Source: Ostrea edulis (lineage: Eukaryota). Taken from it: 64,000 bases of DNA. The stretch lies in contig NC_079170.1 in assembly GCF_947568905.1 (NCBI RefSeq), positions 85,126,001 through 85,190,000 on the forward strand. Reading direction: 5' to 3'. Position numbers and translations under genes: made by a program. A model generated the notes under the pieces. The model made no database searches. It saw nothing but the letters and a program-made list of their open reading frames with translations, and was not told where the DNA came from. Each line of letters begins with the position of its first letter. Positions within the stretch are counted from its first letter, which is position 1. Of the stretch, positions 3,438 to 64,000 are shown piece by piece.

Positions 3438-5861
3438 ATGACAAACCTGGTGATTTTCTGTGTAGCTTTTGTCGCATTTCTGACTTATTCTGAAGCCTGT
3501 ACATGTCTGTCTCAACACCCACAAACCCAATTCTGTAACTCGCAGTTCGGTATGTTACTTTCATTTTCAGTTCTAATAATCATTAACACCGGCTATTCCT
3601 ACCAGTCCTCGTGGGAACGTTTGAAGCAATATTATGATAAGTCCTTTTATATGCACTTGCCACTTTGTTTCCTGCACCTTTAGCTTGTTGTTCGGTTGTT
3701 TAAAAATGTCGGCAAATTTCTAATTGTTAAAGCAGAGTAATGTAGTAGTTTGCCATAACTCCCTTGTGATTTTCGATAATTATTGTAGAACTAACTTTTA
3801 CAAAGCCAAGTCATCCATCACACACTGATATTTGATTTCAGATGCAATCCACACATCTTTAATATCTAACGTTTGTTTCAATTTCTTCCACCAGTGGTTA
3901 AAGCTAAAGTCATTCGTCGGGAAACTGTTAACCGAGGACGAGAAGTTGTTTATAGTGTGAGGATTCTGAAGGATTTCAAGGTAAAATTTTCATCATTAAC
4001 ATTTGATGATAATTCAAGTTTTCAGACATGTTGCGCCCGTAGTTTTGTAAATGAAATATCAGTTACATAATGCAAACAGATACAAATGTTTTGTAATCAA
4101 CAACAGAGGAAAAACACCTGAAAATTACGTTAAGAATCAAACAAAATTCTAATTATTTCTTGAGAAGCTGTATTTGAATTTTACTTTTAGTGTATTGAAA
4201 ATGTGACTAAAACTTGATAATTAATTTAATGATATCTAATTTTCTTAAACTGATAATTTCTTGAATTGTATCATAAATAATTGATTTGTTTCACTATGGG
4301 GTTTAATCCATGTTTTTTTTTGGGGGGGGGGTTGTGTCAGTTCAAATTATTTTAAGCACTAACGTGTGGGTGGTGTCTGCTTTAGGCATATCATGTAGTG
4401 TGTAAACTAAGATGCATTGTTTCTCCCAAATACATATCATTATTAATATATTTGTCTTCTCTCTTTTAATACATTAACATCTGAAAATATTGTTTATATC
4501 TCTTAATATACGTGAACTTTGTTTTTATCTAACATTAGACTTTTACTGACAATGCGTGCTCTGCGGAGATTGTAAATCTTTTGAAATTTTGATTACTTTG
4601 AGGTTCAACAAATGTATGCAATTTGTTTCTACGTTTCAGGGTGACGGAACACGCTATTCCAATACACAGAAAATATATACCAGCACTTCATCTGCTAGTT
4701 GTGGATCATATTTCGAATTACAAAAAGAATACATCATATCTGGTAAATTGAATTTCATGCTTAAACCTTTCAAATGTTATATTTATCACATAGATTGAAG
4801 TCAGCATTTCGCAAATTCTATGGTCGTTATAACGATCTAGTTTGTCAATACAACCTATCATTGGGTCAAATGCCGTCTGACGTGTTTCATACCGATTGTT
4901 AGAGCGTTCTTGACACACTGATTTTGACTACGGATAACTCCGTTTACCTGGTCAGGATATAGGATTCACGGCGGGTGTGACCGGTCGACAGGGAATGCTT
5001 ACTCCTCCTAGGCACCCGATCCCACCTCTGGTATATCCAAGGGTCCGTGATTGTCCAACTATCTGTTTTGTATTGCTTGTAGGAGTTATGAGATTGATCA
5101 CTGTTCGTTATTCACCTTTCATGTTTTCAGGTTCTATTAATGGACAAAAATGGAATACAGGCCTTTGTTCCTGGAATACAAGGACATCTTTTCTCACCCA
5201 ATACCAAAGAATTGCTTTGGATCTTGATATCTATAAGAATAGTTGCAACTGCAAGGCAAGTTATTTTCTGACTGATAGTCAGGTTTTGAATCGAGGGAAT
5301 TGATACTATTTCGATAAATGTTTCAACATCACCACTAGATAATATTTATAGTACCAACGTATGAGTACAGAACATCTATGCTTACTGCTGTGGAATCAAA
5401 CAGAAGTAAACGTAGAATGTGAATGTAAAGGATACATTTCACCTCCCCCCCCTCCCCAAATTAATGTGAGCTGCAACGTTTTACATCGATATACTTTTCA
5501 AGAAATATTAAGGCGTTTCATGAAAATATTCCGGCATAAAGTGTCGCTGTTTGTTCTTTACATAATTTCTAAAAATCTGATTAATTTTTCAACATTAAGA
5601 TTTAACTTTATTAAGAATTTCTTACGTAAGGATATTCTGGAATTATGTTGAAGTATAATGTCACTGTTAAATTGTGAAATATTTCCATGTGTTCTTCTTC
5701 TACAGATTGTAGAATGTGGTTTTGGCGGAAGTCAATGTCCACAAGCAACGGGAGTGTCGTGCGTGATTCCATCCAGATCTGACGTGAACTGTTGGTATCA
5801 GAATAATTCTTGCAACCTCTCTCCATATGGATGTGCCTGGCATTCCCCTGCATGCGCTTAA
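3438..5861 (+). CDS. timp: TIMP paralog A1 (193 aa, 5 coding exons)
   Basis: Exons 3438-3549, 3895-3980, 4640-4742, 5131-5255, 5706-5861 join in frame (phases 1,0,1,0; 582 nt). Signal peptide MTNLVIFCVAFVAFLTYSEA is followed by CTC..HPQ..FCNS.FVVKAK, IYT...SCG, LCSW and SCNCK, then a Cys-rich C-domain (14 Cys in the mature protein). Intron 4 donor is GC (aag|gcaagt). Confidence 0.93.
4793..5122 (+). mobile_element. PLE family copy in TIMP A1 intron 3
   Basis: Matches the 3' 330 nt of the family and ends 8 nt before exon 4. Confidence 0.85.
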
Positions 5862-13034: not shown

Positions 13035-13592
13035 ATGCAAGGTGAAGATAACGAACAGTGATCAATCTCATAACTCCTACAAGCAATACAAAATAGATAG
13101 TTGGGCAAACACGGACCCCTGGACACATCAGAGGTGGGACCAGGTGCCTAGGAGGAGCAAGCATCCCCTGTTGACCGGTCACACCCGCCGTGAGCCCCAT
13201 ATCCTGATCAGGTAAACGGAGTTATCCGCAGTCAAATAAGTGTTCCAAGAACGGCTTAACAATCGGTATGAAACACATCAGACAGCATTTGATCCAATGC
13301 GAGGTTGTATTGACGAACTAGATCGTTATAACGACCATAGAATTTGCGAAATGCTGACTTCAATCGAGACTGTTGAAATCCCTGTACCATCAACTTGTTT
13401 GTCAGTAGCTTACCTCGATTTAAAAACTGACTATACCCAGAACAAGCTCTTGCATATCGAATCAGTTGAGATATATAAACACCATATGCAGGTGATAATG
13501 GAATATTGCTACATAAATGTGGGAAGTTGACGATGGAGAAGCTGAAATCATCCCGTTTGTCATACAGTTGAGTTGTCAGTTTGCCGTTAATG
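13035..13592 (-). mobile_element. PLE family copy (5'-truncated)
   Basis: Near-identical to 19923-20480, with the same 3' terminus. Confidence 0.85.
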
Positions 13593-17400: not shown

Positions 17401-18243
17401 ATTAATGGACATAGATGGAATACAGGCCTGTGTTCCTGGAATACCAAGACATCTTTTCTCACCAAATACCAAAAAAACGCTTTAAATCTTGGTATCTATA
17501 AGAACAATTGCAGCTGCAAGGCAAGCTATTTTCTGACTAATAATTGCATAATTATTTATAAAACATATCAGGTTTTAAATAAATGGATTGGATACTACTT
17601 AGAGAGATGATTTACAGCTTAAACAATTCAACAATCAAGGATGTTTTACTGTTGCAACTAAATATTTATTAGTATTTCCAATATTTGTCTTGTATATATC
17701 GACCAATTGTAATGATAGTTATTTCCCCATGAATGTGGTGTCGTTGTATATATCCAAAAATAAAGTACATCTATCTTAACAGTTGTAAAATCCAACAGAA
17801 GTAAAAGTAGAATGAAATGAGAGTATAACAATTTACACCGGCATGCTTTTCAAGAAAATATATTCTCTTCACGAAAATAGTCCGGTTTAAAGCCTCGCAA
17901 TGCATTCCTTGTATGTTTTCAAAAAAATATTTATTTCTCAACATCATGTTATAACATTTTAAAGATAATCTTAAAAAGGGATATTCTGAAATCAAACTGA
18001 AGTTCAATTCCATTGTAAAACTTTACAATGTCTCTAGATCCTCTTCTTCCACAGATTATAGACTGTAATTTTGGCGGAATTCAATGTCCACAAGTAAACA
18101 GAGGGGCGTGTGTGATTCGATCCAGATCTGACGTCAAATGTTGGTATCAGAATAATTCATGCAGTCGCTCTACGTATGGATGTAGCTGGCTATCCCCCGC
18201 CTGCACAAAGCGTGAACACAACGGATACCTACTTCAACACTAA
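14488..18243 (+). CDS. timp: TIMP paralog A2 (201 aa)
   Basis: Exons 14488-14599, 14890-14975, 17122-17215, 17396-17520, 18055-18243 are in frame. Mature N-terminus CSCLPEHPQ. Exon 3 has a 9-nt in-frame deletion relative to A1/A3. GC donor at 17521 (gcaagc). C-terminal tail TKREHNGYLLQH. Confidence 0.92.
15359..16879. mobile_element. Probable Kolobok-like non-autonomous element in A2 intron 2
   Basis: TTAA|AGGACACATTTCATGTTTTC at the left end and a degenerate inverted copy GAAACATGCGATGTGTCTGTCCT|TCAA at the right. It accounts for the ~1.5-kb excess over the A1/A3 intron 2. Confidence 0.5.
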
Positions 18244-19922
18244 TGGGAAGTAAAGAATCTTCCGTGTGCTGTTTGAACTATTTATTTTGAAAAGCCTTAC
18301 CAAGAACACTGAAAATTCTTTATGTATGATAAGTATTTAAAATATTAATCTATTTGTCTTTAGATTTTGTTGATTTACCTTTACTTTGTACAATGGACGC
18401 TGAAGAGAATATATTATTATTATGTACACACTCCTTGTATAGAGCTACGTTTTGGCGTAAACTATTTATGATGAAGTAAACTATTGAATATCTCAATCAT
18501 TGATGATGAAAATAAATAGATTTTTAAAAAATCTTATATCTGATTCTTCGACCCCCCCCCCCCCCCCCCCCCGCCCTCGAACTAATGGATATTACGTAAC
18601 ATTTGCACCTCGTACGCTTAATGTTTGAAACGATGAAACATAAAAAGGTCCTCGTCAAAATTTCTCAAGTATCTATATACTTCACCTGATGGCTGATAGT
18701 TATCATCAAACAATGCTTTGGCTGTTGGGATAAAAAAAAAAGCATTATTATAGATGGTAAGCATATAAATGAGATTTCATTTCATTTATCTCCTCTCAGT
18801 AATAACAAACTAATTTCAAGGAATTACAAAATGTGATTATTTATTTGCTGTGCTAATCAAGTTATCGGACAATTTACGCACGTTCATAACAATTAATCCA
18901 CAGCTTCCTTTTGAAAGTTAAACCAAAGAAAGCAAAAACAATCAATGCACCATGTTTCACTCATTTATGATGAACCATCATAAAAGCTGGAGTGTTCGAT
19001 AAGCCTTTTCTCTGGGGTATTGACTACCACAATACGGGACCATCTTGCATCCGCCGTCACAATCATCGTGATTAAAAATAGCATTCTTTATTTCAAAATT
19101 TTACTGGATACCATACTTTTCAAAATCATATCATATACATTCATATCCAATACATGTAATAGTATATCTCTATATCTATATAATGCACATTACTATATGT
19201 ATGTTTTATTCTTAATACATATACAGAGAATGTATGATATGACGTTTCAGAAATGGTGTCCCCCAAAACTGTATTTGAAATCATGATTCGGTATTCAAAA
19301 TTTAGATTGTCGAAATATTTTTAAAATTGTAAAGGAATGCAATTTAGTCTCTAATATAAAAGGACCCTATGTGTTCGCATTGATTTTAGATGTTACTGAA
19401 GTTCAATTAAAACAGACAGTAGGGTTATCGTGCCCTACGTAAAGTTCAAACAATAGTCACAAAATGTACCCCAGTGCACACTATCTGACGTCGAAATATC
19501 AAAGTACATCACGACGTACAGGTCCATAGTTTTATCGCGGGGAAAATGTCTTATTGTTTCGCTATTTACTACCGGTATCCAGTGTTCAAGATATATATGT
19601 TGAAATTTATTTGTCAGATGGATATCTTTAGTTTTCTTTGATGATATATATAGTGTGCACTAATCTTTATATTACATTTTGACCTTGATGTGCATAGTCA
19701 TTTAGGATAAAGAAAACCAACGTGTGTACATACCAACTTGGCACAGGTGAAAGATGAAAATATTCGGGTGGGGGGGATTTAAGGCATATTCCTAAAAGTA
19801 GCTAGTTCCAGATTTAGGATTTTGATGCGGATGGTAGGATTTTTTGCCTTGTTAAGATAAACTTTGGCAGCGAATGCGAGAAATTCCCAACATTTGAGTC
19901 GAGTTTATGGAAATTTCTATAT

Positions 19923-20572
19923 ATGCAAGGTGAAGATAACGAACAGTGATCAATCTCATAACTCCTACAAGCAATACAAAATAGATAGTTGGGCAAACAC
20001 GGACCCCTGGACACACCAGAGGTGGGATCAGGTGCCTAGGAGGAGTAAGCATCCCCTGTTGACCAGTCACACCCGCCGTGAGCCCCATATCCTGATCAGG
20101 TAAACGGAGTTATCCGCAGTCAAAATCAGTGTGCCAAGAACGGCTTAACAATCGGTTTGAAACACGTCAAACAGCATTTGACTCAATGCGAGGTTGTATT
20201 GACGAACTAGATCGTTATAACGACCATAGAATTTGCGAAATGCTGACTTCAATCGAGACTGTTGAAATCCCTGTACCATCAACTTGTTTGTCAGTAGCTT
20301 ACCTCGATTTAAAAGCTGACTATACCAAGAACAAGCTCTTGCATATCGAATCAGTTGAGATATATAAACACCATATGCAGGTGATAATGGAATATTGCTA
20401 CATAAATGTGGGAAGTTGACGATGGAGAAGCTGAAATCATCCCGTTTGTCATACAGTTGAGTTGTTAGTTTGCCGTTAATGTCTACTTTCAATAAAATAT
20501 CTAAGTATGAAGCAGAAGTGGACGACTCTGTGGTGTCCTTTATTTCGAGCTCACAGGGATATATCAAATGAA
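19923..20572 (-). mobile_element. Penelope-like retroelement (PLE), longest 5'-truncated copy: RT C-terminus plus 3' UTR
   Basis: The ORF gives IYPCELEIKDTT..ASYLDI..LYDKRDDFSFSIVNFP..SNIP.SPAYGVYISQLIRYARAC (PLE-type RT palm/thumb), then a stop and a ~220-nt 3' UTR ending TTATCTTCACCTTGCAT. Confidence 0.8.
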
Positions 20573-23184: not shown

Positions 23185-25983
23185 ATGACAAACCTAGTGA
23201 TTTTATGTGTAGCTCTTGTTGCGTTCTTGGCTTATTCGGAAGCCTGTAGATGTCAGTCTCAACACCCACAAACACAATTCTGTAACTCGCAGTTTGGTAT
23301 GTTACTTTCATCTTCAGTTCTATTAATCACTAAATTGTCCCCACACCTTTGATCGCGTTACATACTTCATTGTCTTCCCCTTGACTTTAATTGTGTCGTT
23401 GTTTTAAAATTCCGGAATATGTTAAATGAGAAATTATCAAAACCGTAACGCGAAATCATGCAATATCTTCCTATTGCTCGCTTGTGATTTTTAATTTACA
23501 AAAACCAAGTCATCACTAACACAGTTATATTTAATTTCAGTGGTAATTCATCTTATTTATCTGATATTTTTCGTACAGTGGTTCAAGCGAAAGTCCTTCG
23601 TCGAAGAACGATCAACAGAGGAAGAAATGTCGTGTATACTGTAACGATTCTGAGGGATTTCAAGGTATGTATTTCATATTAAGATTCCAGAAATGTTATA
23701 CCGATATACGTGTAACCAATTGCCTGTTATGTGATGAAAAAACGCATTTTGATTAAGAACATTTTAATTGTTTCTTCGTAAGATGTTTTAACATTCTAGC
23801 ATTCCCAATATATCAAGGAGTCCGTGTTTACCAACCTGGCTATTTTGTATTCCTTGTAGAGGTTATGAGATTGATCACTGTTCGTTATCCTCACCTTTCA
23901 TTGAAAATATGATGAGAATTTAAGAATTCGACCAACCACATCAAAATGTATTGAACTTAATTAGTATACTGGTTTTTGTTCCTTAGTGGTGTGCAAATCG
24001 TAATGTATATGTTCTAATCTAAATTATTTATTACATTTACCAACTAGCGTGTGGTGTCTACATTAGCCCAGCTGCGTCTTTTGTGGTGTGCAAACTGTGA
24101 TATGTTTCTCTAAAATACATGTACTTATAATGTATCTGTAATGTTTATTTTGATGCATGAACCTCTGAAAATGTGTCTGTGTCTTAAAATATGTTAAGTT
24201 TCTTTTATAAACAATAGTTACATATGTTTTCATAATACTGTATGTCATTCAAAAGCCCCCCCCCCCCCCTTGAGATTATATTTTCCCATGTATTGAAGCA
24301 TTCACCGCATGGATCTTATTTTGTCTCGGATCATTTTGAGGTTTCCGAAGTATCAGTACTTTGTTGATATTTTCCAGGATGACAGACGACGATATTCTAC
24401 AACACAGAATATCTACACCAGATCTTCTTCTGCTAGTTGTGGTTCCAACTTCAATTTAGAAAAGGAATACATCATATCTGGTAAACAGAGGTTCTTCTTT
24501 AAACCTTGGAAATGTTTTTATCGTTTATTTTGTTTAATTTTTCCCATGACAATGTCTATTATGTAAACTTATACGGTACCAATTTTGATGCACCAGATGC
24601 GCATTTCGACAAATACTATATCTTCAGTGATGCTCAACCGAAATTTTTGAAATCCGAAATAACAATGAAGTGTTAGAGATATTATAGGGAAAACAGTGTT
24701 CAAAATAAAGTGGAGTCAAATTTGTTTAAGGATAAGAGCTATGCGTGATGGAGATAATCCTTAATTTTGAAATGAATTTCTTAATTTTATCACAGCAGTT
24801 AAATATACATCCGTATTTTCAAGCTAGTAACGAAGTACTTAGCTACTGAGCTGTAGAGACCCTCGGGGACTAACAATCCACCAGCTGAGGCCTCGACCCA
24901 GGGTTTATAATGTAAAACTTATACGGTACCAATTTTGATGCACCAGATGCGCATTTCGACAAATAATGTCTCTTCAGTGATGCTCAACCGAAATGTTTGA
25001 AATCCCAAATAACAATGAAGTTTTAGATCTAAAGCAATTAAAGCAGAAATTCATGAAATGGATTTTAGATTGTACTTCTCTGCTTTAATTAATGGTTTTA
25101 TTTTATTTTTTCAGGTTCCATTAATGGACAAAAATGGAATACAGACCTGTGTTCGTGGAATACTAGAACATCTTCTCTCTCTCAATACCAAAGGACTGCA
25201 TTGGATCGTGGTATCTATAAGAACAGTTGCAGCTGCAAGGCAAGTTATTTCCTGACTGATGGTTGCATATATATTCATAAAACATGTCGGGTTTTATATC
25301 ACGGTGAATACAGTCGATCCTTTAGGACGTATGAGTACAGTAAATCTATTGTGACGTATGGATAGACTAAATCTATTGTAACGTATAAGTACAGTAAATC
25401 TATTATGACGTATGAGTATAGTAAATATATTATGACGTCTGTGAATTCCAACAGAAGAAAACGTAGAACGTTGACATAAAAGATTTATTTCAATTTTTAA
25501 AAAATAAGTAAATGTAGACTACAACGCTTAACACCGGCATATTTTTCAATAAATACTAACGCACCTCATAAAATTATCGCGGCTTAAGGTTTCCGTATAT
25601 ATCTTCAAAAACTTAATTCATTTCTCAAAGTTATGCTTTAACTTTATAAGAAAATTCTTACATAAGGATATCCTGAAATTAAGATGAAATTCAATTTCAC
25701 TGTTAAACTTTGAATTATATCCCTGTCCTTTTCTTCTACAGATTGTAGAATGTAGAATTATATCCCTGTCCTTTTCTTCTACAGATTGTAGAATGTAGAA
25801 TTATATCCCTGTCCTTTTCTTCTACAGATTGTAGAATGTAGCTTTGGCGGAAGTCAATGTCCGCAACCAACCGGAGGATCTTGCGTGATTCGATCCCCAG
25901 CTGATGTCAATTGTTGGTATCAGAATAATTCCTGCATGATGTCTACGTATGGATGTGCCTGGCATTCCCCTGCCTGCGCATAA
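23185..25983 (+). CDS. timp: TIMP paralog A3 (193 aa if the most distal intron 4 acceptor is used)
   Basis: Exons 23185-23296, 23579-23664, 24378-24480, 25115-25239, 25828-25983 are in frame. Mature N-terminus CRCQSQHPQ. GC donor at 25240. The intron 4 acceptor region is triplicated (25712-25840). Confidence 0.88.
24590..24633 (-). ncRNA. Type I hammerhead ribozyme, second copy with degenerate stem II
   Basis: Same as 24940-24983, but the stem II 5' strand is UAUA instead of GACA, so the G-C closing pair is lost. Confidence 0.75.
24940..24983 (-). ncRNA. Minimal type I hammerhead ribozyme (canonical core)
   Basis: The - strand reads GCAUCA CUGAAGA GACA UUAUU UGUC GAAA UGCGCA UC|UGGUGC: stem I 6 bp, stem II 4 bp, palindromic stem III, AUC cleavage triplet. 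Confidence 0.9.
25326..25440 (+). repeat. 27-bp minisatellite (~4.3 units) in A3 intron 4
   Basis: Unit GACGTATGAGTACAGTAAATCTATTGT. A1 has a single related copy at ~5356. Confidence 0.85.
25712..25840 (+). repeat. Perfect 43-bp x3 tandem repeat spanning the A3 intron 4/exon 5 junction
   Basis: Unit GAATTATATCCCTGTCCTTTTCTTCTACAGATTGTAGAATGTA at 25712, 25755 and 25798. Confidence 0.95.
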
Positions 25984-34400: not shown

Positions 34401-35160
34401 AATTTAATAATTTCTCCCGTCAGCAGTGATCGATCTAGACAAGAGTCTCATCCGGAATTTAGGTAACAAAGGATCACTGCAAATTATCCCCACATTATTT
34501 TAGAACATTATATTCCCACCTCTGCATTGTATACGATAGTTTGCTTTTTCTTTTATTTCATATCTGAGCATCCATCAACACACCAATAATTTGTTTTCTT
34601 CGAAAGTATCTTAGACATCACTATTCACAATGTAACATGGGACATGAGTTCTAGACAGTATCTTAGACATCATTATTCATAATGTAACATGGGACATGAT
34701 TTCAAGATATTATCTCCAACCCTGTCCTCTCCGGTCTCTGCATCAGCATGACTACATGTAAATAAATATTTTTTTACTGTACTTTTTGTGACTTTTTCCT
34801 CAAAATACCGCCAAAAAATTGGACAACCACAGAAAAAATCAGTCATAAGCTACATGTGTGTTCATGCTGCCCTATCCTCCAACGCATTTTTTTTATATTG
34901 CAATGTACTTTACCAAGGAGGTATATATTAAACAATACAGACCCTTATTCTTGTGGTAGACCTTAAATCTGAACACCATGATGTGTTTTCTTATGACAGT
35001 TTTTGTTTACAGATCACATGAGAAACTAATTAAAAATCAATTAAATTTCTTAAAACAAATACCAACTCAGTTTGAAATCATATAAAAGAAAGGAAATTAG
35101 TAAGCCCTACAACACAGAATTTTCCTGATGCACAGAAGATACGTCTAATTCTACAGTAGA

Positions 35161-37570
35161 ATGAAGTTGCTCGCTGGTTGTTGCTTGCTCGCCATTGCAT
35201 TGTTTCATTATTCAGATGCCGGTTGTTCTTGTCCACTGCAACATCCTCAGCAAGCGCTCTGTGATGACAACGCCTTTGGTAAGTCCATGATAAGGAATTA
35301 ATTTCGACTTAATACAATTATCCCTTTCGTTCAATAGACAAACCAGCACTTTGTATCATCTTAGATATGTATGGAAATTGGCATCTCCTTTTATCAAACT
35401 CTTCGAACTAAAAGCAGATTTAGAAGTTTTAAGAAATGAAATCCAAGTTTTCAATTATTCAGTCACAAAATTATATCGTATATCATGTCATCTACGTCTT
35501 TAGTTGAAATTACATATCCGTTGATAGATATTAAGTAACTGATGTAATGAATTATTTTTACAGTACTGAAGGTCAAAATACTAAACAGAAAGACGTTGTC
35601 AGGTGGACCAAGATCAGAACGCCGCGTTTATAAAGTTAAAGTCTTAAGGGATTACAAGGTATCGCAATTTTAAACACCAAAATATCAATGATTTACTGTA
35701 TGCAAGGTGAAGATAACGAACAGTGATCAATCTCATAACTCCTACAAGCAATACAAAATAGATAGTTGGGCAAACACGGACCCCTGATTAGATTTCATTG
35801 TGTTTCATATATTCATAATGTTGTTATTTTGCAGAACACATTTGACCCTATTCACGGAAATGAAAAGATCTACACGAGTAGTTCAAAGGAACCCTGTGGA
35901 GTATATTTCAGTAGGAAAGTAACATACATCATAAGTGGTAAGGTTTACCTCACAATTCTGGTCATCAAAACAAGTAACAAAAATAATAAAACTTTTAAAG
36001 AGGAACGTCACTGTGTTAATACCATACTGATAGTATCGTGTCTCCTTTTACTGTTTTCATTTATTTATTCGCTTTTTATGGTGGTTGCGTTATCTGGGTG
36101 ATTTATTTCTTTGAGGTTGTTACACTTTTCATGGATTTTCATATCGCCTTCAATGTGTGATATAAAGGGCCTCCGTGGTCGAGTGGTTAGAGCATTGTAC
36201 TCAAAATCACACGGCCCCTCACCGCTGGTTGGTGTGAGTTTCAATCCCGCTCGCGCCGGTAAGTGAGAAAGTTTCCCTGTTCACTTTCGGAAGGTCGGTG
36301 ATCTCTTCACTGGTACATTGTATCAGAGTTTTCTCTTCCACCAATAAAAACTAGGGCCACCAGATAACTTAAACTTTGTTGAGTGTGACGAAAAACAGCT
36401 ACACTATCAATCAATCAATGTGTGATAAATTCTAATTGCAGGATATAAATCTGGCGGGAGGTTTGTGACAAGTTCCTGTTTCTGGAACCAGAAGATCTGC
36501 ACCGTCACGCGCTTCCAGAAATTCGCTCTCAAGACTGGTCTATACAAATCCAACTGTCAGTGCAAGGTAATTTGTTGTTACCTTATTATTTTCTTAATAC
36601 CCTAACTGTCAGTGCGAGCTAAATTGTTTTTACCTTATTATTTTCTTAATGCTAAAGAATACCCATTCATCCATTTTTTTTTAGAATTTGTAATCTGCGA
36701 TTAAAGTACTATTGACTGTCATTTTGATGTCGAACATTTTTGTTGTGATATGAAAGTCTTGTTATTGGTATTTGTGTTAAAACGAAAATCTATTCAGGGG
36801 CTCTACATAAAGAAAAGTTACATTATCGTCTTCCCGCACAGATGTTTATTTTTAATGTATATGATGCTAACTTAGTTTTAATTTCATCAATGGTTATGAT
36901 TAGAGTTATATACAATACTGCCATAATATGACATTTTTATTACAAAAGAAAATTTGCAGATTTAGAGCTAATGATGCTTTGGGTAAGATTTATTGTATGG
37001 TAAGAACTCTAGAGGATGTGATAATAGTACCATTTTTTTAATCGAGTCCTCACTACCATCGTGTTCGAGATTGTGCGGTTTGACTATATCTGTATTGTAC
37101 AGTGTACCATTACAAGGGGGTAACTACTAGTATAATTACAAGTACCATCTTAATTCAAATCAAATGTGATGTGCTACTTTGTTAAAATTATTTTGTTCTA
37201 GATCAAAGACTGTACAGACGGATTCTGCAATCCCCCAACGAGAGAAGACTGTGTCATCAAATCAAACAGAGGCTGCTTCCTAGAAAAGAACGCATGCGTC
37301 CAGAAATCAAACTATGGCTCCCTGCATTGTGGCTGGAAATCAAATACTTGTGACTCGGATTCCACCTTTAAAGTCAACAAGCAGGTTGTTTATGAACCCA
37401 CGGAAACCGAGGTTCTAAATCATAAGACCTTCGAACAGACTGTACACAGATTGTTTGATCCACCTGCGAAACCAGACCATGGGCCAGAGTACAACCACGC
37501 AGCACCAGGGCCGTACACAACACACGTCCAAAAAATCGTCGATCATGTCGGGGGAAATGTTGGCCACTAA
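35161..37570 (+). CDS. timp: TIMP paralog B1 (269 aa, divergent, long C-terminal extension)
   Basis: Exons 35161-35278, 35564-35658, 35835-35937, 36442-36566, 37202-37570 are in frame with the same intron phases as the A genes, and all introns are GT-AG. MKLLAGCCLLAIALFHYSDA-GCSCPLQHPQQALC, IYT...PCG, NCQCK. Exon 5 encodes 122 aa. TATAAAA at 35081. Confidence 0.9.
36167..36418 (+). mobile_element. tRNA-derived SINE (family 2) in B1 intron 3; paralogous copy at 45949-46204 in B2
   Basis: A-box GTGGTCGAGTGG, B-box GAGTTTCAATCC, (CAAT)n tail, and a 13-bp TSD TCAATGTGTGATA (36150-36162 and 36415-36427). Confidence 0.8.
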
Positions 37571-38592
37571 ATTCATTTTACCAACATTTTTGAAATATAT
37601 TTATGTAACAGATTTTTTTAATGTTGATATTTAAGTTATGCATTTGTTTTGAATTTGAAAATAATCTTTTAGGCCTGTGGATCATGTAACGACATTACGT
37701 TTTAATCATTTAATTTGAACTGTAGATTGTTAATAAAATGACAATTTCAATTAATCTATGAATCGAGTATATCTCTGATGCAAACAAGAGTTTGATCAGG
37801 TGAAGAGGATTGACTTGTTAGATATATGTATCTAAGACATAATATATTTAACAAAAGATATTAGAACCAAATATTTTCTGAAGGACATATATGGATTGTC
37901 ATGTCTTGTATGCACCCAGTGGCGGATTTAGAGGGTGCGCAGTCGCCCCCCCCCCCCTAAAATTTAATGTACTAACAATAAAAGAAGCAATAATTTCTTC
38001 CACTCCTGGAGAAATAAATGACCAAATGGCAAAATGAAGGCAATGACCACAGATCAATCTCATAATGCCTAACAAAAGGTTTAAGATTAAGAGGAGGGCA
38101 AACACGGGAACCTGGACACACTAGAGATGGGATTAAGTGTATTGGCAGAGTAGGCATCCCCTGTTAATCGGTCAAAGCCATTTTATTTCCTTCCTCACTA
38201 TACGTGAATTGAATAAATTACTCTCGTCAAGTTAATAATCAAAATACAAATTTACAAATTTATACTCATCTGAAAGTTATATGCATACTGCAAACATAAG
38301 TAAATATCTTATACTTACGATCCTCAGTTCTTATGCAAAAAAGATTGACTTACAAATAATGTGTATTTGAATTGTGCGATCATGTCCTTTTGAGGTCCTA
38401 TCGGATTGCAGGATGTAGTTACTTGATAATGTCAGTGGTATCTACTTCAGTAGTATTGACAGCAGTCAGTAAAGGTGCAGATGGTACATCTAATAGTGTT
38501 ATTTTCACCAGACAACTTATCATAAAAAATGTTTTTAGGAGAACTTGTGTATTTCGTTTCGAATGCTAACCATGATCCAATTGTTCTATTAT

Positions 38593-55076: not shown

Positions 55077-55901
55077 ATGAGAACCGTGGCGATTGTCTCG
55101 GCAGCGTTTGCTGCGATTTTTGCCTATTCCGAAGCATGTACCTGTTGGTCTCAACATCCCCAAACTCATTTCTGTAACTCCGATTTTGGTATGTTGTATT
55201 TTTTGTTTCATTTTTAATACTAACAATCACCAATCCATCACTCTCTGTTTTCTTTTCTCCCGTTGAATTTTACACTTGCGATACACTGTTTCTGGATATG
55301 AAACATGTCCTTGTAGGTATTTTTAACACTAACACATCCAGTATCTTGCAGTTGTTCACTTTTGACTTTCCATAATTTCTACATTATTCCGGAATGATTC
55401 AATAATTGTCATATTTTACGCAATATCATTTATATCTAATTTTGGTTTATCTTCTTCAGTATCGAACTTTTATTTCATCTGTTCTCAACAGTTATCCGGG
55501 CAGCGATCCTTAATCGAAAAACAGTCAACATGGAAATTGTATATACAGTGAGGATACTGAAAGAGTTCAAGGTAATAATCTTATCATGATATTTGATAAT
55601 CAGATAACAAATAGAAATCCTACAAAAGCATANNNNNNNNNNNNNNNNNNNNNNNNNNNNNNNNNNNNNNNNNNNNNNNNNNNNNNNNNNNNNNNNNNNN
55701 NNNNNNNNNNNNNNNNNNNNNNNNNNNNNNNNNNNNNNNNNNNNNNNNNNNNNNNNNNNNNNNNNNNNNNNNNNGTAGCATTTTCCTTGCATTTTTTTGT
55801 AAAAAAAGAAATCATATCATGTTAATGACGGAGCAGAAAAGAAAGAGGTCCTTTTGGAATAATATTTTGCTGCTATGTCATTTTGTTGTTTTTCTACGTT
55901 T

Positions 55902-56343: not shown

Positions 56344-56982
56344 AAATCATATCATGTTAATGACGGAGCAGAAAACAAAGACGTCCTTTTGGAATAATAT
56401 TTTATTGCTATGTCATTTTGTTGTTTTTCTAGGTTCCATTAATCGCGGGAAATGGGTAACATATCTATGCGAATTTAATGCTGTGCCATCTTCTCTCACC
56501 CAATACCAAAGAGCTGCTCTGGATCTTGGTATCTATGAGAACAGCTGCAGCTGCAAGGCAAGTTATTTTTAACCGATCCGATTATTTAATTTCTATACAT
56601 ACGAAAAATGTCAGTCTTTAAGTCAAGGAATGTCATAGAATTATCGCCATCAAAAAATGGTTGGTATCTTACACATATCACCAACCAAGGTACAATTCTC
56701 ATGATAATTTGATTCATTTGATTACATTCATCAAATTATTATAAATATGTTAGCTTACTTTTAAGATTTTGCTTCATGTCTTCCTTTTTGTAATAGATCG
56801 AACGATGTGGTTTTCAAGGAAAAAAATGTCCAGAACAAACGAGAGATAGTTGCGATATTATATCGGATTCTGATGCCACGTGTCGGTATCAGAATAATTC
56901 CTGCAGACTGACTCCGTATGGATGTTACTGGGATTCCTATGCCTGTTCAAACAATGGAAACAACGGATATCAAAACCTATAG
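55077..56982 (+). CDS. timp: TIMP paralog C2 (202 aa)
   Basis: Exons 55077-55188, 55492-55571, 56124-56229, 56433-56557, 56797-56982 are in frame. MRTVAIVSAAFAAIFAYSEA-CTCWSQHPQTHFCNSDFVIRA. GC donor at 56558. TATA at ~55021-55029. Assembly gap in intron 2. Confidence 0.88.
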
Positions 56983-59643: not shown

Positions 59644-59920
59644 TATACAACCTCGCATTGGGTCAAATGCTGTCTGACGTATTTCATACCGATTGTTAAA
59701 CCGTTCTTGGCACACTGATTTGACTGTGGATAACTCCGTTTACCTGATCAGGATATGGGGCTCACGGCGGGTGTGACCGGTCAACAGGGGATGCTTACTC
59801 CTCCAAGGCACCTGATCCCACCTCTGGTGTGTCCAGAGGTCCGTGTTTGCCCAACTATCTATTTTGTATTGCTTGTAGGAGTTATGAGATTGATCGCTGT
59901 TCGTTGTCTTCACCTTGCAT
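59644..59920 (+). mobile_element. PLE family copy
   Basis: Family 3' end ending CCTTGCAT. Confidence 0.85.
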
Positions 59921-60599
59921 ACAATAAACATAAAGACGAAAAAATGAAATACTGGTGAAAATAATAATCCTACAGTCGATTATTGTTTCAATCTTTCAGA
60001 AAAGCCTTTACGCTATTACTATCTAATTTTGGAACCGGTTTTGAATAACTGTCTAAGTTATACTTAGTATACTTTTCTTAAATAGAATCACTTAAAGACC
60101 CAATTTTAAGTTAACTCCCCCAAATTATAAGCTGCCTGTCAATCAAACATTTAACAATAGATCTCATTTGGGATGACATCTGCAGACATTGTGGTCTTGA
60201 GCTACCCCAGAGAGGTGTTTTGATAACAATAACAGCCAGTACCTACAGGCATTCTTTAGATCTTGAGGAAGCCCAGTATACCTGAGTTTTGATAGCATTG
60301 ACCTGTCCACAACTGCTATTTTCTGGTAATTCATTTTTTTTAAAAAGACCCCTGAACAATGCAATTTCAATATAATTGTAATTTTCCCCCTCTACATACA
60401 TGTATTATAAATTACACAATTTGAAATCAAACGATAATTTGCACAATAATTTCTAAAACTTGTAACTTGTTGAAATAATTTATGTCATCAATTTATGACA
60501 CCTCTATATTTATAACAGAAATTATTCATTGAGTCAATGAGGGTAAGAGAGAGAGAGAGAGAGGTGGGTGTAGAATGTGTGTCAACTACCCTTGGGAAT

Positions 60600-62563: not shown

Positions 62564-64000
62564 CTATATCCCATGGCACTCAAAGAAATACACAGAGACA
62601 GAGATGATCCAGACAGAACATCTGTCCATGTTTTTTTTTATATTTTGATATACACAGGACCTGTCTGTCACTATATGTCTAGGATTAAATGACTTCTTCC
62701 TCCTGGCTGGTGCACCGTTGTATCGGAATCGAATTATCCCTGACTTGTTCACTACGACTACGGTGTCAGCATTATCATCAGAGGCACATATGTCCCTTTT
62801 GTTGTTTTCCTCCACAAACAGTGGGACATTCCCTCCTTTATAGATTGGTTCTCCATCTTCATCTCTATATATTTCCTGTTTAACTATGTGTCCTTGATAA
62901 CAGAAAATTTTATGTTGGCTAAAATCAGTAGTACACATACTGACCAGGATGTTCCCTGACTTAGTACACAATAGTTTGCCTAGATGCCAGCCCTGTGGTG
63001 TGGTTATCAGTGTCTCTGTTCTGCCGTGTCTGACAATGTCCACAGTTCTATTATTTCCATCACTGTATACCAGTTCTCCCTGTCTGGGCACTGTAATGTC
63101 ATTGGGACATGTTTCATATATAGTGATGACAGTGCCCCATACAGACCCGTGTATATCAACACGTCTTATGGTTTTATATGTACCACTAATCCAGGCTTCA
63201 TCCAGTCCCACACAGGCGACATGGAAGATAGGATTAACTCCCATAGGAATGGTTATAATTGATTTGGCTTGGTTTAATATATTTTGGAGAGGAAACTTCA
63301 TCTGTTTGACTCGATGAGATTATCTGTGTCAGACTAGCCCTGTATTCGTTTAATTTCAAGCTGAGTCCTCTCCCTTGGACTATCTTAGTTTTCAGTGATG
63401 GTGTTTCGACATCAAATATCCGTAGGTATGTTCTTGTATTGTCCAAGTTTGGATTTGTAATTCGTGACTTCAGACACTTTTTTTTATTCAGCAGTTCTTT
63501 GTTTTGTTGAACTGTTTTAATCATATGTTGTATTCGATTTTATATTTCACATTGGTGAAATTTTAGAGCAGCTAGTTGAACCTCTTTCATTAATTTGATC
63601 AAAGAACCCAGCTTATTAAAGATTTTACTGCATTTACTTCTTGATGCCAGAGTTTTCTATCCTTTTCTTTTTCTTTATCGATTTCATGAAATTTGGTTAA
63701 TGTAAGATATAATTTGCTTTCTGTTTCCTCATTTTTCTTCTTGTACGGGGGAATGATAATGAATTCAATTTTCTTTGTTTCATTTTNNNNNNNNNNNNNN
63801 NNNNNNNNNNNNNNNNNNNNNNNNNNNNNNNNNNNNNNNNNNNNNNNNNNNNNNNNNNNNNNNNNNNNNNNNNNNNNNNNNNNNNNNNNNNNNNNNNNNN
63901 NNNNNNNNNNNNNNNNNNNNNNNNTCAGACAGACTGCAACTTTACATTGTTGGCAGTGAACTTCACATCTCTGATTAGGGTGAAATTCACACTCAGGAAA
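62564..64000 (-). pseudogene. B-box + coiled-coil + NHL/beta-propeller (TRIM2/3-like) gene, frameshifted, partial at the window edge
   Basis: 63925-64000(-) encodes CEFHPNQRCEVHCQQCKVAVCL (B-box). 63234-63786 gives coiled-coil frames. 62564-63301 gives NHL-like repeats (DITVPRQGELVYSD, ICASDDNADTVVVVNKSGIIRFRY, PRHIVTD). The frames shift near 63300 and 63620. Confidence 0.75.

What the first reader, a model, noticed from the sequence alone, without database searches (positions are those of the whole stretch)
37202..37570. 72-aa His/Pro-rich C-terminal extension on B-type TIMPs
Seen: after the last Cys, B1 continues DSDSTFKVNKQVVYEPTETEVLNHKTFEQTVHRLFDPPAKPDHGPEYNHAAPGPYTTHVQKIVDHVGGNVGH (7 His). 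B2 (48590-48958) keeps all 7 His and adds one. Six replacements cluster in the first ~11 tail residues, while the distal part is nearly invariant and free of stops and indels. A and C tails are only 1-12 aa. The ORF track misses this exon. Inference: a constrained appended module, possibly for Zn/Cu binding, matrix or shell cross-linking, or release as a peptide.
Basis: partly seen in the sequence, partly recalled or inferred. Interest (0 to 1): 0.7.

Follow-up and report, generated by a model that had tools for sequence, protein, structure and literature searches.

The report
Conserved histidine-rich tail on oyster TIMPs
Two neighbouring flat-oyster metalloproteinase-inhibitor (TIMP) genes end in a 72-residue histidine-rich tail that is kept under purifying selection in at least four oyster genera, so it is a real added module; what it does has not been tested.

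Summary
Exon 5 of B1 (37202-37570) and of B2 (48590-48958) runs on for 72 codons after the last Cys. B1 has 7 His and B2 has 8. The five other TIMP paralogues in the window have tails of 1-12 aa.

B1 and B2 are recent duplicates whose introns and 3'UTR are as alike as the tail, and tail dN/dS between them is 0.85.

The conclusion is nevertheless right, on evidence from other species:
- Both genes are RefSeq models in Ostrea edulis (XP_048740556.2, XP_048741235.2).
- Orthologues in Saccostrea echinata, S. cucullata, Magallana gigas and M. angulata, and in an unnamed oyster contig, all carry the tail in the same last exon.
- Tail-only BLASTP gives E 1e-15 to 2e-12, while introns and UTRs no longer align.
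- The maximum-likelihood dN/dS ratio (omega) is 0.30 for the tail and 0.14 for the Cys-rich part. Omega = 1 fits worse by about 26 lnL units.
- An intronless Magallana contig carries the tail.
- His columns are better conserved than other tail columns. Magallana duplicated a roughly 47-aa unit and reaches 28 His.

Nothing related was found outside these TIMPs. The function is inferred only, most likely metal- or pH-dependent anchoring. No release sites are conserved. This is a new variant of a known family, of moderate interest. The scan had not noted the tail before.

The parts
35161..35278 (+). B1 exon 1: start codon, signal peptide, then G-C-S-C at the start of the TIMP domain
   Evidence: P0001 mapped onto the window, GT donor at 35279
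35564..35658 (+). B1 exon 2
   Evidence: AG/GT junctions read directly
35835..35937 (+). B1 exon 3
36442..36566 (+). B1 exon 4, end of the N-domain (…NCQCK)
   Evidence: Pfam TIMP E 7.6e-5 for this exon alone; junctions
37202..37351 (+). B1 exon 5, first part: Cys-rich C-domain, 50 aa with 7 Cys
   Evidence: omega 0.14 across species
37352..37378 (+). B1 tail, variable linker (DSDSTFKVN), where the B1/B2 replacements cluster
   Evidence: also the least conserved stretch across species
37379..37567 (+). B1 tail, conserved core of 63 aa. Motifs: KxVVYEP, E..L.H, VH(K/R)LF, KPxH, GPY(T/S)xHV, (I/V)DHV, and a variable end …VGH
   Evidence: 18 invariant columns across the nine Ostrea, Saccostrea and Magallana sequences of A4/A5; 13 remain invariant when L008 is added (A7). 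Tail-only BLASTP E 1e-15, 2e-12, 4e-14. ML omega 0.30
37568..37570 (+). B1 stop codon TAA
37732..37737 (+). AATAAA, likely poly(A) signal 162 nt after the stop (inferred)
   Evidence: read; conserved in B2; not tested with transcripts
43742..43859 (+). B2 exon 1
   Evidence: P0010 mapped
45438..45532 (+). B2 exon 2
45624..45726 (+). B2 exon 3
47819..47943 (+). B2 exon 4
48590..48739 (+). B2 exon 5, Cys-rich part
48740..48955 (+). B2 tail, 72 aa with 8 His
48956..48958 (+). B2 stop codon

Best explanation
Shown: the tail is the translated C-terminal part of the last exon of a distinct TIMP subfamily ('B type'). In this window its members are XP_048740556.2 and XP_048741235.2 of Ostrea edulis. 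Orthologues in Saccostrea, Magallana and a further oyster carry it too. It consists of a short variable linker of about 9 aa followed by a conserved, Cys-free core of about 60 aa that has been under purifying selection since these genera split. It occurs nowhere else in this genome and has no detectable relative in the protein libraries, Pfam or the PDB. Inferred: the core acts as a histidine-based binding tail for metal ions (Zn/Cu) or for ligands whose binding depends on pH. It would hold the secreted TIMP-like protein in an extracellular matrix or link it to partners, much as His-rich flanks do in mussel byssal collagens. Val/Tyr/Leu/Phe positions alternate with the His and probably form short strands that present the imidazoles. 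I put about 0.9 on 'real, expressed, constrained module' and about 0.35-0.4 on the metal or pH anchoring mechanism.
For: - Gene model: P0001 is 100% identical to exon 5, and the five exons have GT-AG junctions. Pfam TIMP scores 73.8 bits on residues 22-184, and the tail lies outside that match.
- Orthologues carry the tail in the same last exon.
- Tail-only BLASTP gives E 1e-15, 2e-12 and 4e-14, while introns and the 3'UTR do not align between genera.
- NG86 omega for Ostrea against Saccostrea is 0.34-0.37 (intervals 0.16-0.70) at dS of about 1 or more. ML omega is 0.30. Omega = 1 fits worse by about 26 lnL units.
- An intronless 1083-nt contig, L007, encodes the whole 322-aa Magallana protein with the tail and ends in an A-run. 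Genomic L006 has the introns.
- His makes up 9-22% of the tail against about 1-2% of the core.
- His columns are conserved at 3.0 of 4 against 1.65 of 4 for other tail columns, permutation p = 0.017.
- Magallana duplicated a roughly 47-aa unit and has 28 His. The L008 tail has 13 His.
- A decayed third copy (L003) has a frameshift and stops, and has lost H229, H246, D261 and H262.
- His-metal cross-linking by His-rich domains is established in mussel byssus (PMC6477608).
Against: - Only 3 His (H221, H229, H262) are invariant, and most invariant residues are hydrophobic or Pro. That fits a docking motif as well as metal binding.
- His content in Ostrea and Saccostrea is modest, about 10%.
- No known metal-binding motif or family matched.
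- The AlphaFold model was unusable, with mean pLDDT 35, so neither fold nor disorder is established.
- S. cucullata lost the last 7 residues to a stop, so the extreme end is dispensable.
- B1/B2 omega is 0.85, which could mean relaxed constraint in O. edulis.
- I found no transcript or proteomic evidence for O. edulis itself beyond the RefSeq models. I found no tissue or shell-proteome record for any orthologue.
Confidence: 0.55

Rival explanations
1. The tail is a docking tail for a specific protein partner. Its conserved short hydrophobic motifs (VVYEP, VHKLF, GPYxxHV, DHV) would bind an exosite, for example a hemopexin-like domain of a metalloproteinase, as the C-terminal tail of vertebrate TIMP-2 binds proMMP-2. 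His would be incidental or would tune the interaction with pH.
For: 15 of the 18 invariant tail residues are not His. They form short motifs separated by variable spacers. The TIMP core aligns with human TIMP-2, whose own tail is functional: PDB 1gxd is listed under the same chain sequence, and the tail-hemopexin contact is from my own knowledge.
Against: There is no sequence similarity to the TIMP-2 or TIMP-4 tail, which is short and acidic. His columns are among the best conserved. His content rises 2-4 fold in the Magallana/L008 branch, partly by duplication of a unit, which suits binding that depends on His number better than one fixed interface. No partner is known.
Confidence: 0.25
2. 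The tail folds back on the TIMP C-domain as extra strands. It would be a structural extension of the fold with no binding role of its own.
For: Conserved Val and aromatic positions alternate with polar ones, which looks strand-like. DSSP of the poor model places one strand at 208-211.
Against: The tail is hydrophilic (GRAVY about -0.9), is 10% Pro, and has variable spacers with indels between motifs. Magallana tolerates a 47-aa internal duplication. The model confidence is far too low to count.
Confidence: 0.1
3. The tail is cleaved off and acts as a free His-rich peptide, such as a histatin-like antimicrobial or a metal-carrying peptide.
For: It is His-rich, Cys-free and sits behind a variable linker. 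Oyster TIMPs are induced by wounding and infection (Montagnani et al., as cited in PMC4860685; own knowledge for the details).
Against: No dibasic or furin-type site is conserved at the linker or anywhere in the tail. B1, S. echinata and S. cucullata have none at all. The tail is weakly acidic to neutral in Ostrea and Saccostrea (pI 5.1-6.2), unlike cationic antimicrobial peptides.
Confidence: 0.05
4. The tail has no function. It would be a neutral read-through extension or an annotation artefact that looks conserved only because B1 and B2 duplicated recently.
For: B1/B2 tail omega is 0.85 and the flanks are equally similar. The extreme C-terminus varies, and S. cucullata truncates it.
Against: The frame stays open in seven sequences from four or five lineages, at synonymous saturation. 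Omega is 0.30, and omega = 1 is rejected by about 26 lnL units. The tail is present in an intronless transcript-like contig. The one copy that is clearly dead (L003) has decayed.
Confidence: 0.04

Closest known systems
Canonical two-domain TIMPs (Pfam PF00965; human TIMP-2, PDB 1br9/1gxd)
   Same: The Pfam TIMP match is well over the cut-off. All 12 canonical Cys align with TIMP-2. The protein has a signal peptide and a two-domain layout. The M. gigas orthologue is catalogued as a 'core Mollusca-Brachiopoda TIMP' (PMC10755359, supplement).
   Different: It has a 72-125-aa His-rich tail after the last Cys, where TIMP-2 has about 19 residues. It has three extra invariant Cys (C125, C172, C197).
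C-terminal tail of vertebrate TIMP-2/TIMP-4 that docks on the proMMP-2 hemopexin domain
   Same: Both are functional sequences appended after the last disulfide of a TIMP C-domain.
   Different: The vertebrate tail is short and acidic and has no sequence similarity. The oyster tail is 4-7 times longer and His-rich. No partner is known for it.
Sbp8-1, atypical TIMP-like protein of scallop byssus (PMC5975577)
   Same: It is a bivalve TIMP paralogue from a tandemly expanded family with altered features at the C-terminus. It is reported to be non-inhibitory and to act as a structural cross-linker.
   Different: Sbp8-1 cross-links through two extra free Cys and has no His-rich extension. The oyster proteins were not detected as its relatives in the searches run here, and their activity is untested.
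His-rich flanking domains of mussel byssal preCols and similar His-metal cross-linking sequences (PMC6477608)
   Same: These are secreted bivalve proteins with Cys-free, His-rich terminal segments. Their His-Zn/Cu coordination is the model for the mechanism proposed here.
   Different: There is no homology. They belong to a different protein family (collagens). Their His density is often higher than in Ostrea and Saccostrea. Metal binding by the oyster tail is untested.

Membership tests
TIMP (PF00965) | Pfam TIMP domain match above the gathering score | tested here: met
   P0001 scores 73.8 bits (cut-off 23.1) on residues 22-184, profile positions 3-178 of 183. P0012 scores 82.8 bits.
TIMP (PF00965) | Twelve conserved Cys (six disulfides) across the N- and C-domains | tested here: met
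   In the profile alignment to human TIMP-2 (1br9, E 1.5e-15), all 12 TIMP-2 Cys pair with Cys of the oyster profile. Three further invariant Cys are extra.
TIMP (PF00965) | Cys1 is the first residue of the mature protein, with a free alpha-amino group that chelates the catalytic Zn | tested here: inconclusive
The sequences read …SDA-G-CSC in O. edulis, …A-IKE-CKC and …A-KSE-CKC in Saccostrea, and …AE-SG-CSC in Magallana. No signal-peptide predictor was available.
TIMP (PF00965) | Inhibits metalloproteinases | not testable with these tools
   This needs an enzyme assay.
TIMP-2/-4-type C-terminal docking tail | Short acidic tail after the last Cys, similar to …QEFLDIEDP | tested here: not met
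   The tail is 72 aa with pI 5.9. The PDB profile search with the tail alone found nothing at E up to 10. The alignment to TIMP-2 stops at the last shared Cys.
His-rich metal-coordinating extracellular segments (functional class, not a homology family) | Strong His enrichment in a Cys-free terminal segment of a secreted protein | tested here: met
   His is 9.1-11.1% of the tail in Ostrea and Saccostrea, 16.5% in L008 and 20.5-22.4% in Magallana, against 1-3 His in the core of about 180 aa.
His-rich metal-coordinating extracellular segments (functional class, not a homology family) | Demonstrated binding of Zn/Cu/Ni | not testable with these tools
   This needs a peptide or recombinant protein and ITC, ICP-MS or IMAC.
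Sbp8-1-like structural TIMPs | Extra unpaired Cys near the C-terminus that drives polymerisation | tested here: inconclusive
   There are 15 Cys in the mature protein, an odd number, and the invariant extras include C197, the last Cys. Disulfide pairing is unknown.

The most novel reading that the evidence does not exclude
The tail is a module confined to true oysters (Ostreidae), with no detectable relative in any other protein. It turns a TIMP scaffold that probably no longer inhibits, because its N-terminus is blocked, into a metal-cross-linked structural or metal-buffering matrix protein of shell, cement or hemolymph. The number of metal-binding His has been raised in the Magallana lineage by point changes and by an internal 47-aa duplication.
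Probability: 0.2. Interest if true: 0.6.

Novelty: new variant of a known kind. Interest (0 to 1): 0.42.

Why it matters
Oysters have the largest TIMP repertoires known: 28 canonical genes in M. gigas (PMC10755359). What the extra copies do is open. One subfamily combines a conserved His-rich tail, three extra Cys and extra residues before Cys1. That makes it a concrete candidate for a TIMP that has taken on a new role, such as matrix anchoring, metal handling or cross-linking. Oysters also accumulate exceptional amounts of Zn and Cu (own knowledge). The tail gives direct handles for experiments: tail-specific peptides for proteomics, a natural His-rich segment for metal-binding assays, and a natural series of 7, 13 and 28 His across genera.

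Tried and rejected
- Word search with exon 5 alone (122 aa): no candidate in the 67-213-aa range. This is uninformative, because full-length proteins are 269-324 aa.
- HMMER search of 1.84 billion cluster representatives with exon 5: only its own cluster, plus two spurious multi-repeat matches. One is a bacterial or phage tail-fibre-like protein with …TATHVQDALDEIDGNVDGN… repeats. The other is a Tudor-repeat protein. I rejected both as chance matches inflated by repetition.
- Pfam on the tail and on the Magallana tail: nothing significant.
- PDB profile search with the tail: nothing at E up to 10.
- ESM Atlas by features: no usable hit.
- JGI metagenome scan with the tail profile: 260 pattern matches, none confirmed.
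- AlphaFold2 on a 9-sequence alignment: mean pLDDT 35. I discarded it and ran no fold search on it.
- Literature searches by accession, LOC id, SRA/ENA run id, and 'histidine-rich' with TIMP and bivalve: no paper on this tail. PMC10755359 lists the M. gigas orthologue only as a core TIMP.
- No complex prediction was run, since no partner is claimed.
Full-length sequences came from proteins the searches returned (P0001 and others). The L008 gene was used exon by exon, by reference.
- The N runs at 55633-55774 and 63787-63924 were left alone.

Full report
**What is there**

The window is G000:C7:85126001-85190000 of an 895-Mb assembly. Proteins returned by the searches name the organism as Ostrea edulis.

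Each has 50 residues with 7 Cys, then 72 residues without Cys, then TAA. An AG acceptor precedes each exon.

The representative search returned P0001 (269 aa, XP_048740556.2, 'metalloproteinase inhibitor 3-like'), which is 100% identical to exon 5. B2 is XP_048741235.2 (P0010).

Mapping these proteins onto the window gives five exons with GT-AG junctions:
- B1: 35161-35278, 35564-35658, 35835-35937, 36442-36566, 37202-37570.
- B2: 43742-43859, 45438-45532, 45624-45726, 47819-47943, 48590-48958.

The tail is therefore not an exon of its own. It is the second part of the last exon, and it is already inside the RefSeq models. The bacterial-style ORF list misses it only because the frame has no start-type codon until late in the exon.

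Pfam TIMP matches residues 22-184 at 73.8 bits. A profile of the orthologues aligns to human TIMP-2 (1br9, E 1.5e-15), with all 12 canonical Cys paired. The tail, residues 198-269, lies outside both matches.

The five other TIMP last exons in the window end 1, 12, 1, 11 and 11 residues after their last Cys. The gene order is A, A, A, B1, C, B2, C.

B1 and B2 belong to a recently duplicated B-C unit. Their introns and 3'UTR are about 90-95% identical where they align. The tail differs at 16 of 216 nt and 11 of 72 aa.

Nei-Gojobori dN/dS (omega) values for B1 against B2 are:

| Region | omega |
|---|---|
| Whole tail | 0.85 (bootstrap interval 0.35-3.4) |
| Distal 59 codons | 0.70 |
| Cys-rich part | 0.24 |

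The paralogue comparison therefore shows no constraint on the tail. The cluster of six replacements in residues 3-11 coincides with a linker that also varies between species.

**Cross-species evidence**

A word search with P0001, and a second with a profile, found full-length orthologues:
- Saccostrea echinata, P0004, 278 aa.
- S. cucullata, P0005, 271 aa.
- A cluster holding Magallana gigas XP_011421474.2 (P0012, 324 aa) and two M. angulata proteins.

An ENA metagenome contig (L008) carries a fifth, more divergent gene with all five exons. In a codon tree it sits next to Magallana.

In S. echinata (L004), S. cucullata (L005), a Magallana genomic contig (L006) and L008, the tail lies in the same last exon as the C-domain Cys.

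Tail-only BLASTP against the O. edulis tail gives E 1e-15 (S. echinata), 2e-12 (M. gigas) and 4e-14 (L008), at 43-48% identity. At the DNA level only exons align between genera. Introns and 3'UTRs do not.

Selection estimates between genera:
- Nei-Gojobori omega for the tail between Ostrea and Saccostrea is 0.34-0.37 (intervals 0.16-0.70) at dS of about 1 or more. The Cys-rich part gives 0.10-0.13.
- A GY94 model on seven sequences gives omega 0.30 for the tail and 0.14 for the Cys-rich part.
- Fixing omega = 1 lowers the tail's log-likelihood from -1183.3 to -1208.9 at kappa 2.5.

The tail is under purifying selection, about half as strong as on the neighbouring Cys-rich part of the C-domain.

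**Transcript evidence**

L007 is a 1083-nt Logan contig. It encodes the complete 322-aa Magallana protein, tail included, without introns, and it ends in an A-run. The genomic contig L006 of a close relative has the introns.

For O. edulis itself I have only the RefSeq models.

**Anatomy of the tail**

The tail has a variable linker of about 9 aa followed by a conserved core.

Eighteen tail residues are invariant in the nine Ostrea, Saccostrea and Magallana sequences: K207, V209, V210, Y211, E212, P213, E217, H221, V228, H229, L231, F232, P251, Y252, V256, D261, H262 and V263. Thirteen stay invariant when L008 is added.

The extreme end (…VGxxVxGH) varies. S. cucullata has a stop that removes the last seven residues.

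| Tail | His |
|---|---|
| Ostrea B1 / B2 | 7 / 8 of 72 |
| Saccostrea (both species) | 7 |
| L008 | 13 of 79 |
| M. gigas | 28 of 125 |

In Magallana a unit of about 47 aa is duplicated. The TIMP core holds 1-3 His.

Columns where O. edulis has His are conserved in 3.0 of 4 other lineages, against 1.65 of 4 for other tail columns (permutation p = 0.017). Val is equally well conserved.

No dibasic site or N-glycosylation sequon is conserved.

**Distribution**

In the O. edulis genome the tail occurs three times: in B1, in B2, and in a decayed copy 5.2 kb past the window end (L003). That copy has a frameshift and in-frame stops, and it has lost H229, H246, D261 and H262.

Outside the orthologue cluster, the scan of 1.84 billion representatives gave only two spurious repeat-protein matches. 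Pfam, the PDB, the ESM Atlas and a JGI metagenome scan gave nothing.

A tail-only relative at oyster-level divergence scores about 45-50 bits. That is borderline in a library of this size, so absence outside oysters is not proven.

**Mechanism**

Shown: the tail is a translated, lineage-restricted, constrained C-terminal module of a TIMP subfamily.

Inferred: it binds through His. Two things support this. His positions are conserved. His number also rises sharply in one lineage, by substitution and by duplication of a unit. That pattern suits binding that depends on imidazole number, such as metal coordination or pH-dependent charge. Mussel byssal His-rich domains work this way (PMC6477608).

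The main rival is a docking tail for a protein partner. Most invariant residues are hydrophobic and form short motifs, and the TIMP-2 tail sets a precedent (own knowledge). Release as a peptide has little support. Neutrality is rejected.

The AlphaFold model (mean pLDDT 35) says nothing either way.

They also have three extra invariant Cys. A structural role like that of scallop Sbp8-1 (PMC5975577) is therefore conceivable.

**Novelty**

The proteins are annotated. The M. gigas orthologue (LOC105324115) is listed as a core TIMP in PMC10755359. I found no paper that mentions the tail. It is a new variant of a known family, of moderate interest.

**Limits**

- No O. edulis expression or proteomic data were available.
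- There is no usable structure model.
- There is no survey of bivalves outside the oysters.
- The species behind L008 is unknown.
- The N runs were left untouched.

Noticed in passing
L003:1359-1659 (G000:C7:85195255-85195413, 5.2 kb past the window end): A third, decayed copy of the B-type last exon. The Cys-rich part is nearly unrecognisable. There is a stop after …CDSEPSFKVKN and a frameshift. The last 43 codons are still open, at 78% nt identity to B1, but several invariant residues are lost. It is probably the relic of a third B-C duplication unit.
   Followed up: partly
window 5652-5861, 18019-18243, 25792-25983, 37202-37570, 42377-42598, 48590-48958, 56797-56982: Seven TIMP last exons lie on the + strand in the order A, A, A, B1, C, B2, C. 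The B-C pair is a tandem segmental duplication of about 11-14 kb.
   Followed up: partly
P0001 residues C125, C172, C197 (window 36498-36500, 37274-37276, 37349-37351): Three Cys beyond the 12 canonical TIMP Cys are invariant in all orthologues. The mature protein therefore has 15 Cys, an odd number, so one may be free or form an intermolecular disulfide.
   Followed up: partly
window 35002-35088 and L004:9847-9929: An 87-nt upstream stretch is 78% identical between O. edulis B1 and S. echinata and sits at the same distance (about 70-160 nt) from the start codon. It is the longest of the few non-coding stretches that still align between genera. It may be a conserved promoter element.
   Followed up: no
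window 35699-35786, 38592-38847 and more than 15 other places (e.g. 13035-13289, 19915-20178, 59666-59930): A short interspersed repeat of about 90-260 bp occurs in both orientations, with 80-100% identity between copies. One copy sits in B1 intron 2 and is absent from B2.
   Followed up: no
window 44111-45404 and 46216-47796: B2 carries insertions of about 1.3 kb in intron 1 and about 1.6 kb in intron 3, relative to B1.
   Followed up: no
L005:12648-12680: In S. cucullata a stop replaces the codon that is Arg in S. echinata (…DHV*QKVVGL*). This removes the last seven tail residues. The old frame and its stop are still readable downstream.
   Followed up: partly
P0012 residues 200-324; L007; L006:652-1176: The Magallana tails contain an internal tandem duplication of about 47 aa (KVNVHKKVNHEPP…KQHPKHENSH and KVNVHKGVVYEPP…KQHPEHKSSH) and end in …HVKHHVASHH, which resembles a natural His-tag.
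   Followed up: partly
L008:399-617: On the unnamed oyster contig, a short-tailed TIMP last exon (…CTWHSPACF*) lies about 1.7 kb upstream of the B-type gene, so the A-next-to-B arrangement is shared with that species.
   Followed up: no
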